Shown: in pieces, positions 12,432 through 16,216 of the stretch
How positions within the stretch are numbered: position 1 is the first letter of the stretch
How the letters are laid out: every line of letters begins with the position of its first letter
Source: Prasinococcaceae sp. CCMP 1430
Taxonomy: Eukaryota; Plantae; Prasinodermophyta
Reading direction: 5' to 3'
Assembly: GCA_013416795.1 (NCBI GenBank)
Contig: RQSC01001001.1
Span: 1 to 45,908, forward strand
DNA length: 45,908 nucleotides
Position numbers and translations under genes: made by a program
The notes under the pieces: generated by a model
What the model was told of the DNA's origin: nothing
Databases searched by the model: none
The model's input: the letters and a program-made list of their open reading frames with translations, nothing else

Positions 12432-13784
12432 GCGTCGGGCTCGGGGCGGGCGGCGGAGGGCGCGGGGGCCACGACGAGCCAAACGCTCACGAGCCTCAAG
12501 ACCGGCACGCACGTCTACACCATCAAGGGCTACTCGCTGCTCGTCAACCGAGGCGTCGGCGAGGCCGTCTCGAGCGAGCAGTTCGAGGCGGGCGGCCACA
12601 GCTGGACGGTGCACTTCTATCCAGGTGAGTGCAACGCGCTGGCGCTCCTGGGCTGCGCGCCGCGAGAGCGCAGGGGCTGCCACGCGCCTCGCGGCGGCCG
12701 CTGCGTGGCCTCTGACGCGTGCGCGCGACGCTGCGCGTGGATCCTGGCGCAACCGCGCGCGCCGCATCCCGAACGCACTTCGCCTGCGCGCCTCACGCAA
12801 TTTGTCCTCCTTCGCGCGCTCCCGCGCGCAGGTGGATACAACGACGAAGGGAGCAATGCGGAGTACGTGGCGCTCTCGCTCACGCTGGCGTCGGAGGCGA
12901 CCAACCTGTGGGCGCTGTACACGTTCACGATGGTCGACCAAAGCGGCAAGGGCGAGGACAAGTCCATGGGACGCTCCGTCGCGCGCGGTCCGTGCAAGTT
13001 CGAGAGCATCAATTTCCGGCGCGGCAAGCCAAGGTTCATCAAGCGCGCTGAGCTCCAGAGCAGTGGCCTGCTGATGAACGACACTGTGGTGGTGCGCTGC
13101 GAGGTCAGCGTGGTCGTCACCGAGACGACGGTGCCTTCCGAGGGCCCGTACATCCACGTGCCGCCCGCGCGCGTCGGGGAGGATCTTGCCAAGCTCATGC
13201 ATGACGAGAGCAGCTGCGACGTGACGTTCATAGTGGGCGAGGAGCGCGAGCGCATCAGGGCACACAAGCTCATCCTCGGAGCGCGCTCGGACGTGTTTTT
13301 GACGATGTTCAACTCGCCCATGCGGCAAGGGCAGGAGGAAGGCATGGAGGTCGTGCAGGACACGCAACCCGAAGTCTTCAGAGCGCTGCTCCATTTTGTC
13401 TACACGGGTGAGCTGCGCGCGCGCGACGACACACCGGAGATGAGCCAGCACCTTTTGCGCGCGGCGGATTTCTTCAGACTCGACAGGCTGCGCCTGATGT
13501 GCGAGAGGCGGCTCTGCGAGAAGGTCGACGCCTCCAACGTGTCGACTACTCTCGTGCTGGCGGACATGCACAACGCCCAGCAGCTCAAGCAAGTGTGCCT
13601 CGACTACGCCGCGGCCAACCTGCAGGGGGTGATGTCATCGGACGGTTTCGGGACCCTCATGCAATACGACAGGTCGCTGCACCTTGAGGTGCTCGAGGCA
13701 GCCGCTAATCTCATTGAGAGCGACAGGAAGCACCTGGACGAGGATGGCAACGCGCGCGGCGCCAAGCGACGGCGCACGCGATGA
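12432..13784 (+). CDS. BPM: BTB/POZ-MATH protein (plant BPM/SPOP-like CUL3 adaptor); exons about 12432-12624 and 12832-13784; start unresolved
   Basis: MATH: HVYTIKGYS, FEAGGHSWTVHFYP|GGY, YVALSLTL, FIKRAELQSSGLLMNDTVVVRCEV. BTB: DVTFIVG, AHKLILGARSDVF, FRALLHFVYT, LLRAADFF, LRLMCE. BACK: LKQVCLDY. The intron 12625-12831 (GTGAGT..GCAG) joins the frames. Confidence 0.9.
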   Translation, partial: ASGSGRAAEGAGATTSQTLTSLKTGTHVYTIKGYSLLVNRGVGEAVSSEQFEAGGHSWTVHFYPGECNALALLGCAPRERRGCHAPRGGRCVASDACARRCAWILAQPRAPHPERTSPARLTQFVLLRALPRAGGYNDEGSNAEYVALSLTLASEATNLWALYTFTMVDQSGKGEDKSMGRSVARGPCKFESINFRRGKPRFIKRAELQSSGLLMNDTVVVRCEVSVVVTETTVPSEGPYIHVPPARVGEDLAKLMHDESSCDVTFIVGEERERIRAHKLILGARSDVFLTMFNSPMRQGQEEGMEVVQDTQPEVFRALLHFVYTGELRARDDTPEMSQHLLRAADFFRLDRLRLMCERRLCEKVDASNVSTTLVLADMHNAQQLKQVCLDYAAANLQGVMSSDGFGTLMQYDRSLHLEVLEAAANLIESDRKHLDEDGNARGAKRRRTR

Positions 13785-14435
13785 GCGCGAGGCGGAGGAA
13801 CCCAGATCCTACGCACCCCTTCTAGACGTCTTAAGCAGACCCAAGCGCAAGCTCGCCGATAGGAACGCAACAGCGCCGTAAGATTTTCGGCCACTCGTTC
13901 TTTGAACTCGTACTGCACATCCGTCTTGAGCGCTCGTGTGCGGTCGCGGGCGCTGGACCCTCCTCCGTTGTGATTCTCATACTGTGCGTGCGGGAATCTT
14001 GACTTACGGAGCGCGCGCCTGCGAGCAGCGCCTCACGCCGGCGGGAGCTTGGTAGCCTAAGGCGCTGCCACCTCGTCATGCTCCCAGGACAGGCCCTCCT
14101 GTACATTGATTGGACAAGAAATCACGCTCGAGCAGGCTCATTGCGAGGACCGGCTTGTCACCTTCGGACTGGTCCGAGGCACGCCGTCAACCCGCCCGTG
14201 CCCTCGCACGCCTGCGCGAGCATACTGATGCCGTGGAGGGGAGCGAGGAGGCGGGGGAGCGCAAATGCTTGCGATCTCTTACTGTACGTAGTACTACTGT
14301 GTTGCTTGCTTTGCGAGAGCCGCCCTCCCCGCGTCTTCAGAGGTCTGCATGCAGAGCCCACGCACCCACGCAGGCGAGCCCGCGCACGAGACGAGTTTTC
14401 GTGCGCGTGCCGATGTGCCCGCGTGCATGCGCTCT

Positions 14436-14480
14436 TTCGAGCAGCGGCCCCCATGTGTGGGTTTCGGCTACTGCTGTCAT
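14436..14480 (-). promoter_or_regulatory. Eukaryotic type II SECIS element (core and apical part; helix I extends about 10 nt each side)
   Basis: Minus strand reads ATGAC AGCAGTAGCC GAAA CCCA CACA TGGG GGCCGCTGCT CGAA. It has the AUGA/GA quartet, a 10-bp helix II with one A-C mismatch and one U-G pair, unpaired AAA 12 nt after AUGA and an apical CCCA/UGGG mini-stem. It lies about 140 nt downstream of the TAG of a gene with an in-frame TGA. Confidence 0.88.
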
Positions 14481-14619
14481 GTGCGTGCTCCGCCGGGATG
14501 AGACAGGGTCGAGAGAAGGGGAGGGTGGACTCGCGCGCAGCAGCTCACACATCCGAATGCGCATGGACACATCCGCACCCTGCGCGTGCGCACAACCGCG
14601 CTCGCAGCACTCCCGTCGC

Positions 14620-15479
14620 CTAGAGCAGCGCAGCGGCGGCGGTTGCAGCGAGCGCGCCGACCGCGGACGCGCGCACGCGAACGAGCATGCGCCCGGCGCC
14701 GCTGCTGGCTCCATCCGTGTCATCACTGCCATCATCGCCTTCGGCGCGCGCGGGCGCGTCCGATGAAGGTGGGGTCGCATCATCCTGTGCCGGCGGAGGG
14801 GGACTGGCGCTGCCAACACCAGCCAGTGCGGCCTCGATTGCCTGCACCGGCGCGTGCGCGCATGTGTGAGTACGCACGCGCGCGTGCAGGTCTGCCAACA
14901 CACGCTGGCGCTTGCGAGGGTCCGTGCGAGCGAACTCACCTCGTCGAGCAGGCCCGGCGTCGTTTCAGACCTGAATTTCGTGACGATTTCCTCGACCTCA
15001 CCGGCAGGTGTAATCACGACGAAGCGTGGGCGGCTCGATGTGAACCACGTCGAGCCCAGGTTCTCGGTGTCGCGGAGCGTGGCGATGGCGGTGTTGGCCC
15101 CGCCAGAGTATGTGGGCCATGCGTCGCAATCGCTGCTGCTCGTTGTCCAGAGGAGCGTCGCAAAGCGCACGCGGTCGCCGTACTTGGTTTTGGCGTCGCT
15201 GGCATACTCGTCGAAAAGTGGCGCTGCGGCCCTGCACGAACCTCAGTTTACGAAGCTCTTGTCAAGCACGAGCACGTTGCCGTCGCCGAGCAGGCTCTCA
15301 ATGGATGCCTCATCAGCGCCGCCCGCGGCTGCGGCGCCGTCGCACACGGAGAAGCTGCGAACGAGCACGTCCTGCGTGAGCGCGTCGCCGGCGCCGAACG
15401 GTGCCTGCGCGCGCGCGGCCGGCGCGAGCGCGAGCGCCAGGGTGGCGGCGAGCGCACTCGCCACGGTGCGGCGCCTCAT
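14620..15479 (-). CDS. Predicted secreted, GPI-anchored thioredoxin-fold (TlpA/redoxin-like) selenoprotein with a UGSC motif, 253 aa; exons 15479-14940 and 14841-14620; Sec codon TGA at 15245-15243
   Basis: Reading through the TGA gives GDGNVLVLDKSFVN-U-GSC-RAAAPLFDEYASDAKTKYGDRVRFATLL ... RPRFVVITPAGEV, which has the Trx beta1-UxxC-alpha, beta2 and cis-Pro/beta3-beta4 pattern. Signal peptide ...ALALAPAARA|Q. Intron 14939-14842 is GTGAGT..GTGCAG. The C-terminus is DGASSGAGRMLVRVRASAVGALAATAAAALL*. A SECIS lies in the 3'UTR. Confidence 0.87.
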
Positions 15480-16216
15480 CCCGCGCGACGAGGAAGCCCG
15501 CCGCTCTCGGGGTGGGTACGCGCGGCGTCTGCCGCCCGCGCGGGCAGGCGCGCGCGCGCCGCGCCTAGAAGCCACATGGATGCCACGTCACCCGCCGATT
15601 GCCAAGCATCCTCGTACGAAGACCTCGCACACCGCCCAGATGGTGCGCGTCACAGCGCGTGCCCAGCACGCGCGCGCGCGCACGCGCGCTCGGGGAACGA
15701 ACCGGCGCATCCAATGGCGGAGAGACATCCGTGGTCGTGCTCCCGGTCTTTTGGGGGGGCGATCCCCGACTGTTCGGGTGTCCTCCCTATTTACCCGGGA
15801 TCGACTCCCGCTCGCAGACTCGATCGCGATTTTCATTTCATTTCCATTATTTCCCCTCATCTCATCCTCATCAGAGCGAGTGCAGTGCGCCACCCTGGTC
15901 ACCACACACCTAGCAGGCCCGCACGCGGCGCGCGCGGATTTTGAATCGGCACAGCGCGCACGCGCGACGGCCGCAGGCTCGCCCCACCCCTCTCTCTCCG
16001 TCCGGACACCCGCCAGCAAGCTCGCCCTGCCGGCACGTCCCACTGCCAGTGGTACTGCGCAGGCCGCGCGCCCCGCGAGAGTCGCGCCCGCCCGCGTTGA
16101 GCAAGCCGCGCCCGCCGCCATCAGCCTGAGGGTGCGCGGCCCGTCCGGAGCGCGGCGCCAACGCCTTCGGCGGCGACCATTCTGGTTGCTACCTCGCCAG
16201 GCAGCAACAGCAGCGG

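What the first reader, a model, noticed from the sequence alone, without database searches (positions are those of the whole stretch)
14620..14841. The selenoprotein looks GPI-anchored on the cell surface
Exon 2 encodes a Pro/Asp/Ser/Gly-rich stalk (SASPPPPAQDDATPPSSDAPARAEGDDGSDDTDG). Small residues follow (ASSGAG, candidate omega site), then a short basic spacer and a hydrophobic terminus with no cytosolic tail (ASAVGALAATAAAALL*). With the N-terminal signal peptide this is the standard GPI-anchored architecture. Characterised selenoproteins are mostly cytosolic, ER-resident or soluble secreted (e.g. SELENOP, which also has an N-terminal UxxC Trx-like domain). An exofacial GPI-tethered Sec oxidoreductase in an alga would be unusual. 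Roles in cell-surface thiol/ROS chemistry or metal reduction are inference only.
Basis: partly seen in the sequence, partly recalled or inferred. Interest (0 to 1): 0.75.

Follow-up and report, generated by a model that had tools for sequence, protein, structure and literature searches.

The report
Surface-anchor tail on algal selenoprotein
A small selenium-containing redox protein of a marine green picoalga carries a signal peptide, a proline-rich stalk and a C-terminal tail that fits the rule-of-thumb pattern of a GPI lipid-anchor signal. The tail is used in ocean transcripts and recurs in the only two relatives found, so this is a credible but unproven candidate for a first surface-tethered selenoprotein.

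Summary
Window 14620-14841 (minus strand) is the last exon of a two-exon gene: exon 1 is 15479-14940, with an in-frame TGA at 15245-15243 giving U-G-S-C. The exon encodes exactly the quoted stalk, small-residue cluster, Arg-containing spacer and 16-residue hydrophobic end.

Contigs of three marine metatranscriptome runs from two studies skip the 98-nt intron precisely. A DNA run of the organism is collinear, so the tail exon is used.

An exhaustive protein search found only two relatives. One is a Sec form on a metagenome contig (L002). The other is a full-length Cys form from Pyramimonas parkeae. Both have the same layout: N-terminal hydrophobic leader, CxxC/UxxC core, Pro/Ser/Thr-rich stalk, small residues and a hydrophobic C-terminus with nothing after it.

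The tail meets every element of the published GPI-signal pattern. Only 2 of 257 six-frame ORF ends in the window pass the same rule.

Not done:
- no dedicated GPI or signal-peptide predictor was available;
- the GPI machinery of this genome was not checked;
- there is no biochemistry.

A GPI anchor is the best reading at about 0.55. An uncleaved C-terminal membrane anchor is the main rival.

No paper in the searched library describes a GPI-anchored selenoprotein. The scan had already noted this gene and its SECIS in this same window, and first-reader notes on GPI-like tails exist for other pieces of the same genome.

The parts
14940..15479 (-). Exon 1: start codon at 15479, signal-peptide-like leader, and the thioredoxin-like core up to residue 180
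   Evidence: Translation. Transcript contigs cover 15409-14939. The first 70 nt, including the ATG, are not covered by any RNA contig.
15408..15479 (-). Signal-peptide-like leader, residues 1-24: MRRR, then a 17-residue uncharged Ala/Leu run, then A-R-A before Gln25
   Evidence: strongest hydropathy peak, starting at residues 5-8. The same layout is in L002 and P0007. This is a rule-based reading; no SignalP was available.
15234..15245 (-). Redox motif U-G-S-C, with the Sec codon TGA at 15245-15243 (codon 79)
   Evidence: The flanks D-K-S-F-V-N / G-S-C-R-A-A-A-P are identical around a TGA in L002. Cys aligns at this position in the Pyramimonas homologue P0007.
14842..14939 (-). 98-nt GT..AG intron between the core and the stalk/tail exon
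   Evidence: Skipped in contigs of RNA runs X1, X2 and X3; present in DNA run X10. blastn of L001 against the window agrees.
14620..14841 (-). Exon 2 (the finding): linker, stalk, candidate GPI signal and the TAG stop (14622-14620)
14710..14811 (-). Acidic Pro/Ser/Gly/Asp-rich stalk, residues 191-224, containing S-P-P-P-P (the Ser-Pro4 motif of hydroxyproline-rich glycoproteins)
   Evidence: 89% P+S+T+A+G+D+E. L002 has a triple SPPPP-like run and P0007 an SP/TP-rich stretch in the same place.
14692..14709 (-). Small-residue cluster A225-S-S-G-A-G230, holding the candidate omega sites (the best-fitting are S226, S227 and G228)
   Evidence: Rule-based scan
14671..14691 (-). Spacer R231-M-L-V-R-V-R237
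14623..14670 (-). Hydrophobic C-terminal segment, residues 238-253: 16 aa, no charged residue, mean Kyte-Doolittle 1.87, nothing after it
14424..14492 (-). Type-2 SECIS-like hairpin in the 3' UTR: AUGA at 14480-14477, apical AAA at 14464-14462, 3' GA at 14438-14437
   Evidence: Fold. It lies inside the transcript contigs, which end at about 14276-14305. No Rfam hit.

Best explanation
The gene encodes a 253-residue secretory-pathway selenoprotein. The proposed sequence of events is below, with each step marked shown or inferred.
1. A cleavable N-terminal signal peptide takes the protein into the ER (inferred).
2. UGA-79 is read as selenocysteine with the help of the 3'-UTR SECIS. This gives a U-x-x-C redox centre in a divergent thioredoxin-like domain. 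The in-frame TGA, its conservation and its Cys counterpart are shown. The fold is inferred.
3. The last exon adds an acidic, Ser-Pro4-containing stalk, probably O-glycosylated (inferred).
4. It also adds a C-terminal GPI attachment signal. The GPI transamidase would cut at one of S226, S227 or G228 and replace the last 25-27 residues with a GPI lipid (inferred).
5. [quoted passage not shown]
6. There it would carry out thiol/selenol-based redox chemistry on extracellular substrates. The substrate is unknown. Disulfide exchange or peroxide reduction are guesses.

For: - **Splice and tail in mRNA.** P0001/L001. The 98-nt skip is seen in three RNA runs of two studies and not in the DNA run.
- **Fit to the GPI-signal pattern.** The pattern as stated in PMC10491789 is: a small omega residue, omega+1 not Pro, a small omega+2, a spacer of 8-12 residues, a hydrophobic stretch of 15-20 residues, and a polar linker at omega-10 to omega-1. 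With omega = S227 the window protein gives S-G-A, an 8-residue spacer, a 16-residue hydrophobic end and an upstream linker rich in Asp, Gly, Ser and Thr.
- **Hydrophobic segments.** There are only two, at the extreme N- and C-termini, with none internal. This is the criterion used by FT-GPI (PMC9876418).
- **Marginal hydrophobicity.** The tail is only marginally hydrophobic and only 16 residues long, which suits a GPI signal better than a stable membrane span. This leans on Galian et al. 2012, known to me only from its title in a reference list; I did not read the paper.
- **Positive residues.** They lie before the hydrophobic run, not after it.
- **Conservation of architecture despite sequence drift.**
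  - L002 (Sec form, 53% identical over 150 aa) ends in a triple SPPPP-like run, an acidic patch, A-G-S-A-T-S, one Arg and 19 uncharged residues.
  - P0007 (Pyramimonas parkeae, Cys form, about 30% identical) ends in an SP/TP-rich stretch, S-T-G-A-A-G-S and about 20 strongly hydrophobic residues.
  - Neither has anything after the hydrophobic run.
  - In L002 the tail lies in the same exon as the domain, so it is not a splicing accident.
- **Chance control.** 2 of 257 ORF ends pass the rule.
- **Secretory-type cysteines.** Two further conserved cysteines (C46 and C117) are compatible with a structural disulfide. This is inference.
- **GPI pathway in green algae.** PIG-A, PIG-M, PIG-V and the last mannosyltransferase are reported in the prasinophytes Ostreococcus and Micromonas and in land plants (PMC3797821).
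Against: - No trained predictor (NetGPI, PredGPI, big-PI, SignalP) could be run. My test is a rule of thumb.
- The window's tail is Ala-rich with only four strongly hydrophobic residues. The 'hydrophilic' spacer is half hydrophobic and carries three Arg, so it may score as borderline.
- GPI transamidase and PIG genes were not looked for in this genome. The same paper reports a truncated pathway in Chlamydomonas and Volvox and none in red algae, so presence cannot be assumed.
- The 5' end of the mRNA, and so the start codon and signal peptide, is not covered by RNA contigs.
- With only three sequences, conservation of a low-complexity hydrophobic end is suggestive, not statistical.
- The thioredoxin-fold assignment is weak:
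  - no Pfam hit;
  - PDB profile E = 0.41;
  - hhalign against E. coli CcmG, E = 0.03-0.04 with probability under 2%;
  - AlphaFold pLDDT 38.
Confidence: 0.55

Rival explanations
1. The hydrophobic end is not cleaved. It acts as a C-terminal membrane span of a type-I-like protein with no cytosolic tail. The redox domain is still luminal or exofacial but is held by a peptide anchor, not by GPI.
For: - The hydrophobic ends are 16, 19 and about 20 residues long. The Pyramimonas one is hydrophobic enough for a real span (mean Kyte-Doolittle 2.2-2.4).
- No GPI predictor or GPI-machinery check was possible.
- Counting from M232, the window has a 22-residue stretch, if two arginines are tolerated.
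Against: - All three proteins end inside the hydrophobic run, with no stop-transfer basic residues after it.
- In the window and in L002 the only basic residues lie on the luminal side, against the positive-inside rule.
- The window's 16 Ala-rich residues are short and weak for a stable span.
- A cluster of small residues 7-12 positions upstream is kept in all three. A plain span has no need for it.
Confidence: 0.2
2. The protein is secreted or built into the cell wall as a soluble hydroxyproline-rich glycoprotein chimera. The tail is either a transient GPI anchor lost on transfer to the wall or a poorly functional remnant.
For: - Ser-Pro4 motifs are typical of wall glycoproteins of green algae and plants (the motif's meaning is from established knowledge).
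- The host alga is described as thick-walled (PMC7455551).
- The window tail has marginal hydrophobicity.
Against: The tail is kept across lineages that differ by about 70% in the domain, which argues that it has a function. A purely soluble protein needs no hydrophobic end.
Confidence: 0.13
3. The protein is not at the surface at all. It would be an ER/Golgi resident, or the N-terminal Ala/Arg-rich leader is an organelle transit peptide and the C-terminal segment anchors the protein in an internal membrane.
For: - Ala/Arg-rich N-termini are also typical of green-algal transit peptides.
- The start codon is not confirmed by RNA.
- Many thioredoxin-like selenoproteins are ER residents (established knowledge).
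Against: - The leader has a 17-residue uncharged hydrophobic core and A-x-A before residue 25, like a signal peptide.
- There is no KDEL/HDEL-type end.
- The stalk-plus-tail layout matches secretory surface proteins.
- The Pyramimonas leader is not Ala/Arg-rich but is still hydrophobic.
Confidence: 0.1

Closest known systems
Plant chimeric GPI-anchored hydroxyproline-rich/arabinogalactan proteins (for example phytocyanin-like ENODL proteins and fasciclin-like AGPs)
   Same: The same order of parts: signal peptide, one small globular domain, a Pro/Ser/Thr/Ala-rich glycomodule region, and a C-terminal GPI signal made of small residues, a spacer and a hydrophobic end. The lineage is green plants.
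   Different: The globular domain here is a thioredoxin-like U-x-x-C/C-x-x-C redox domain with selenocysteine, which to my knowledge is not reported for such chimeras. The stalk is short, acidic and extensin-like (SPPPP) rather than AGP-like in the two Sec forms. Hydroxylation and glycosylation are untested.
SELENOP (selenoprotein P), N-terminal domain
   Same: An extracellular selenoprotein with a signal peptide and an N-terminal thioredoxin-like U-x-x-C motif (established knowledge).
   Different: The protein has no Sec-rich or His-rich C-terminal domain and only a single Sec. It gives no Pfam hit of any kind, so none to the SelP families. It has a membrane-anchor-like tail where SELENOP is a soluble plasma protein. 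It is not a member.
Bacterial membrane-tethered periplasmic thioredoxin-like reductases (CcmG/DsbE, TlpA, ResA; AhpC-TSA/Redoxin clan)
   Same: These are extracytoplasmic, membrane-tethered C-x-x-C thioredoxin-fold domains. The pairwise profile alignment to E. coli CcmG is in register from the strand before C-x-x-C through the cis-Pro loop. Language-model look-alikes all fall in this clan.
   Different: The similarity is statistically weak and there is no Pfam hit. The tether is at the C-terminus (GPI-like) rather than an N-terminal membrane helix. The protein is eukaryotic and uses Sec. No known electron donor exists outside a eukaryotic cell.
AhpC_b, the U-x-x-C algal selenoprotein family of Thalassiosira oceanica (PMC7539508)
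   Same: An algal selenoprotein with a U-x-x-C motif in a thioredoxin-fold domain.
   Different: AhpC_b has a recognisable AhpC_TSA domain, and all of its homologues found were prokaryotic. The present family has neither, and no tail is described for AhpC_b.

Membership tests
GPI-anchored protein (C-terminal GPI attachment signal) | N-terminal ER signal peptide | tested here: inconclusive
   The rule-based reading is positive: MRRR, a 17-residue hydrophobic core and A-R-A before Gln25. It is conserved in type in L002 and P0007. No SignalP was available, and the ATG is not covered by RNA contigs.
GPI-anchored protein (C-terminal GPI attachment signal) | Small omega residue (G/A/S/N/D/C), omega+1 not Pro, small omega+2 | tested here: met
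   Six candidate triplets lie in D223-G230, for example S227-G-A. Equivalent clusters are present in L002 (A-G-S-A-T-S) and P0007 (S-T-G-A-A-G-S).
GPI-anchored protein (C-terminal GPI attachment signal) | Generally hydrophilic spacer of about 8-12 residues | tested here: inconclusive
   The length fits (7-12 depending on omega). The composition is mixed: three Arg plus Met, Leu and two Val.
GPI-anchored protein (C-terminal GPI attachment signal) | Hydrophobic stretch of about 15-20 residues at the very C-terminus, with no cytosolic tail | tested here: met
   16 uncharged residues, mean Kyte-Doolittle 1.87, then the stop. L002 has 19 residues (1.97) and P0007 about 20 (2.2).
GPI-anchored protein (C-terminal GPI attachment signal) | Polar unstructured linker upstream of omega | tested here: met
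   The residues upstream of the candidate omega sites (roughly G215 to A225/S226) are Asp, Gly, Ser, Thr and Ala only. The stalk is 89% P/S/T/A/G/D/E.
GPI-anchored protein (C-terminal GPI attachment signal) | Positive call by a trained predictor (NetGPI, PredGPI, big-PI) | not testable with these tools
   None is installed. The full-length model read through the TGA was not sent to any tool.
GPI-anchored protein (C-terminal GPI attachment signal) | Host has GPI transamidase and the PIG biosynthesis genes | not testable with these tools
   Only this window of the genome is at hand. The literature reports the pathway in Ostreococcus, Micromonas and land plants, and a truncated one in Chlamydomonas and Volvox (PMC3797821). 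The genome paper's held supplements contain none of the search terms GPI, PIG, GT22, GT50 or GT76.
GPI-anchored protein (C-terminal GPI attachment signal) | Lipid anchor shown biochemically (PI-PLC release, C-terminal peptide removed) | not testable with these tools
   This needs an experiment.
Eukaryotic selenoprotein | In-frame UGA conserved in relatives or aligned with Cys, with conserved coding sequence on both sides | tested here: met
   The TGA has identical flanks in L002, and Cys is at the same column in P0007. Transcript contigs run through the TGA.
Eukaryotic selenoprotein | SECIS element in the 3' UTR | tested here: met
   The minimum-free-energy fold shows helix I, an AUGA/GA internal loop, a 12-pair helix II, an apical AAA and a mini-stem, inside the transcribed 3' UTR. 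Caveats: there is no Rfam hit even at E up to 10, and the fold energy z-score is only -1.1.
Thioredoxin-fold oxidoreductase (thioredoxin / TlpA / AhpC-TSA clan) | Recognisable by family profile or by fold | tested here: inconclusive
   - No Pfam hit for any piece or homologue.
- The best PDB profile hit is a thioredoxin, in register at the second Cys, but with E = 0.41.
- hhalign against E. coli CcmG is in register over 93 columns, E = 0.03-0.04, probability under 2%.
- Atlas look-alikes score 0.94-0.96 and all fall in this clan.
- The AlphaFold models are too poor to search (pLDDT 38), though their secondary-structure order matches the fold.
SELENOP | SelP N-terminal domain plus a multi-Sec C-terminal domain | tested here: not met
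   The protein has a single Sec, no Pfam match and no Sec-rich or His-rich region.

The most novel reading that the evidence does not exclude
This would be the first GPI-anchored selenoprotein. It would be the founding member of a small green-algal family (Sec in Prasinoderma-like algae, Cys in Pyramimonas) of thioredoxin-like oxidoreductases. [quoted passage not shown]
Probability: 0.45. Interest if true: 0.7.

Novelty: new variant of a known kind. Interest (0 to 1): 0.58.

Why it matters
The selenoproteins I know of are cytosolic, organellar, ER-resident, integral-membrane or soluble secreted. I found no lipid-anchored exofacial one in the searched literature.

If the anchor is real, an alga places its most reactive redox residue on the cell surface. 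That opens questions about extracellular electron donors, peroxide or metal chemistry at the surface of picoplankton, and why Sec is kept there.

The gene also appears to be missed by gene calling, because the TGA splits it. Public protein sets hold only fragments of it. The family is expressed in the open ocean, so it can be studied in existing metatranscriptomes.

Tried and rejected
- **Rfam.** A scan of 13700-15700 at E up to 10 gave no SECIS family hit, only chance matches.
- **Pfam.** The three pieces of the protein and the proteins P0001, P0005 and P0007 gave nothing meaningful.
- **Word-index protein searches.** Queries with the post-Sec piece, with P0007 and with profile A2 returned only self and fragments.
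- **Exhaustive phmmer.** The three multi-stretch hits P0003, P0004 and P0006 are long tandem-repeat proteins that score through many weak repeats. I rejected them as relatives.
- **Metagenome locus scan.** Profile A3 matched 104 patterns, but none was confirmed.
- **PDB sequence and profile searches.** Nothing significant.
- **AlphaFold.** Two runs on the Cys homologue, full-length and domain only, with 5-6 row alignments both gave pLDDT 38. I did no fold search on them.
- **AhpC_b of Thalassiosira.** Considered and rejected as the same family.
- **Bacterial/archaeal-type C-terminal sorting signals (LPXTG, PGF-CTERM, PEP-CTERM).** Considered because the genome paper mentions archaeal-type glycosylation genes. 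Rejected by eye: the motifs are absent and there is no terminal basic cluster.
- **Tail-anchored protein.** Rejected because of the N-terminal leader.
- The full-length model, with exons joined and the TGA read through, was used only inside a local script for hydropathy and rule checks. It was sent to no search or fold tool. The pieces were searched by reference, and the natural spliced fragment P0001 served for the junction. So no full-length fold or search of the window's own protein was done.

Full report
**What is there**

On the minus strand the window holds a two-exon gene.
- Exon 1 (15479-14940) starts at an ATG.
- It encodes a leader with MRRR, a 17-residue Ala/Leu core and A-R-A before Gln25.
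- It runs through an in-frame TGA at 15245-15243 (codon 79), giving N-U-G-S-C.
- It ends at a GT donor.
That is a short linker, an acidic Pro/Ser/Gly/Asp-rich stretch with S-P-P-P-P, the small-residue cluster A-S-S-G-A-G, the spacer R-M-L-V-R-V-R, and 16 uncharged residues running into TAG.
- The coordinates given in the finding are the exon's exact borders.

**Is the tail exon used?**

Yes.
- The word search with the post-Sec piece returned one protein, P0001. It comes from a 1007-nt Logan contig of a marine metatranscriptome run (L001).
- Its sequence runs from the domain straight into the stalk and tail.
- blastn of L001 on the window gives two blocks, 15409-14939 and 14843-14305, at 99.5% identity. 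The intron is removed as predicted, the TGA is retained in frame, and the 3' UTR is attached.
- Read laying on 13800-15900 showed the same 98-nt skip in contigs of three RNA runs from two studies. A DNA run of the organism covers the stretch collinearly.
- Transcript contigs end at about 14276-14305, so the 3' UTR is about 320-345 nt. It contains the hairpin at 14492-14424.
- That hairpin folds as a type-2 SECIS, with an AUGA/GA internal loop, a 12-pair helix II, an apical AAA and a mini-stem. Rfam gave no hit.
- No RNA contig reaches the ATG. The start codon therefore rests on sequence and on the homologues.

**Relatives and their tails**

Pfam finds nothing in any piece. The exhaustive phmmer search of 1.84 billion representatives with the 101-residue post-Sec piece found seven hits.
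- Two are the gene itself: the spliced form P0001, and P0002, an unspliced read-through from DNA assemblies.
- Three are tandem-repeat proteins that score through many weak stretches. I discard them.
- Two are real relatives.

*P0005.* It lies on an ENA metagenome contig (L002).
- The full gene there has an MRRS leader with an Ala/Leu core.
- The flanks D-K-S-F-V-N / G-S-C-R-A-A-A-P around a TGA are identical to the window's.
- An intron sits at a different place, inside the domain, and there is none before the tail.
- Its C-terminus has a triple SPPPP-like run, an acidic patch, A-G-S-A-T-S, one Arg and 19 uncharged residues up to the stop.

*P0007.* It is a complete 267-residue transcript product of Pyramimonas parkeae (MMETSP/EukProt label).
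- Cys stands where the window has Sec (V-N-C-A-G-C).
- It has a hydrophobic leader.
- It ends in an SP/TP-rich stretch, S-T-G-A-A-G-S, and about 20 strongly hydrophobic residues.

The N-terminal and core parts align well across the three, with two further conserved cysteines.

Further searches added no member. So the family is tiny, and every member has the same four-part layout. Meanwhile the stalk and tail sequences have drifted: 53% and about 30% identity overall.

**Does the tail look like a GPI signal?**

I had no trained predictor, so I tested the published pattern (PMC10491789). The pattern is:
- a small omega residue;
- omega+1 not Pro;
- a small omega+2;
- a spacer of 8-12 residues;
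- 15-20 hydrophobic residues;
- a polar linker at omega-10 to omega-1.

With omega at S227 the window protein gives S-G-A, an 8-residue spacer and a 16-residue hydrophobic end. The linker upstream consists only of Asp, Gly, Ser, Thr and Ala. Neighbouring omega choices (residues 223-228) also fit.

The protein has only two hydrophobic segments, at its two ends. That is the criterion of the feature-based predictor FT-GPI (PMC9876418).

As a composition control, only 2 of 257 six-frame ORF ends of at least 100 aa in this window pass my rule. One is this exon and the other is a Cys-Val repeat artefact.

Weak points:
- the tail is Ala-rich (mean Kyte-Doolittle 1.87);
- the spacer mixes three Arg with Met, Leu and Val.

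Marginal hydrophobicity is said to favour GPI addition over stable membrane insertion. My only source for that is the title of Galian et al. 2012 as listed, which I did not read. Even so, a predictor might call the tail borderline.

**What the domain is**

The evidence for a thioredoxin-like fold is consistent but weak.
- The U/C-x-x-C follows a hydrophobic strand-like run.
- An R-P followed by a hydrophobic strand, a turn and a second strand resembles the cis-Pro loop.
- The best PDB profile hit is a thioredoxin, aligned at the second Cys, but E = 0.41.
- hhalign against E. coli CcmG aligns 93 columns in register from the pre-CxxC strand to the cis-Pro loop, but E = 0.03-0.04 and the probability is under 2%.
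- Atlas language-model look-alikes (0.94-0.96) are all AhpC-TSA/Redoxin/Thioredoxin clusters.
- Two AlphaFold runs gave pLDDT 38. Their secondary-structure order matches the fold, but they were not searched.

**Most likely mechanism**

The protein enters the ER by its signal peptide. It receives Sec at UGA-79 through the SECIS. It is probably hydroxylated and O-glycosylated on the Ser-Pro4 stalk, by analogy with green-lineage wall glycoproteins. [quoted passage not shown]

- Shown: the gene structure, splicing, the in-frame TGA with its Cys counterpart, the transcribed SECIS-like hairpin, and the conserved architecture.
- Inferred: signal-peptide cleavage, GPI addition, glycosylation, location and chemistry.

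I put the GPI anchor at about 0.55. Within that, actual plasma-membrane surface residence of the mature protein is about 0.45. The remainder is shared by an uncleaved C-terminal span (0.2), a soluble or wall-bound fate (0.13) and an internal compartment (0.1).

**Host and pathway**

Notes of other agents in this scan name the genome Prasinoderma coloniale. I did not verify this. The composition (62-71% G+C over most of the window) and the green-algal homologue are compatible with it.

The genome paper reports many selenoproteins and thick cell walls. Its text does not mention GPI, and its held supplements contain none of the search terms GPI, PIG, GT22, GT50 or GT76.

A survey of algal glycosyltransferases finds the full GPI core pathway in Ostreococcus and Micromonas but a truncated one in Chlamydomonas and Volvox (PMC3797821). 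So the pathway must be checked in this genome.

**Comparison and novelty**

In layout, the closest known things are plant chimeric GPI-anchored hydroxyproline-rich/arabinogalactan proteins. In chemistry and topology they are SELENOP's N-terminal U-x-x-C domain and the bacterial membrane-tethered periplasmic thioredoxin-like reductases. The protein is a member of none of these by the tests I could run.

The algal selenoproteome survey (PMC7539508) describes a U-x-x-C family, AhpC_b. That family is in a diatom, has a Pfam domain and has prokaryotic kin, so it differs from this one.

Full-text searches combining GPI terms with selenoprotein terms returned no GPI-anchored selenoprotein.

I rate this as a new variant of a known kind. 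The parts are familiar, while the combination and the family are undescribed.

**Limits**

- The pieces were searched by reference.

Noticed in passing
L002:3130-3190: In the 3' UTR of the metagenomic Sec homologue, the hairpin that matches the window's SECIS in shape (helix I GCGAAU/AUUCGC, apical GAAA) carries A-G-G-A where the window has A-U-G-A. This could be a non-canonical SECIS core, or the true element lies elsewhere.
   Followed up: partly
window 14842-14939 versus L002:2322-2651: Intron positions differ between the two Sec genes. The window has one intron between the domain and the stalk. L002 has one intron inside the domain, after S-G-G-K, and none before the stalk.
   Followed up: partly
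window 15476-15577 (minus strand): An upstream ATG at 15577 opens a 33-codon ORF in another frame. That ORF ends at 15476, overlapping the main start codon. It would be an upstream ORF if the 5' UTR reaches that far, but no RNA contig covers this region.
   Followed up: no
window 15517-15518: The DNA run of the organism (X10) carries 18 extra bases here relative to the window, about 40 nt upstream of the start codon. This is a strain or assembly difference in a very GC-rich stretch.
   Followed up: no
window 12609-13784 (+): The convergent neighbour encodes a MATH-BTB-BACK (SPOP/BPM-type) protein, with Pfam BTB at E = 2e-25. Its 3' end faces the selenoprotein's 3' UTR across about 500 nt.
   Followed up: partly
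window 15243-15245 and 14939: The Sec codon lies about 300 nt upstream of the only exon junction. In animals this position makes selenoprotein mRNAs sensitive to nonsense-mediated decay when selenium is scarce. Whether that applies in this alga is unknown.
   Followed up: no
window 14620-15479: Public protein collections hold only fragments of this gene that start after the TGA: P0001, and the unspliced read-throughs P0002 and P0013. No full-length model surfaced in any search, so the gene seems to be missed or mis-called by automatic annotation.
   Followed up: partly
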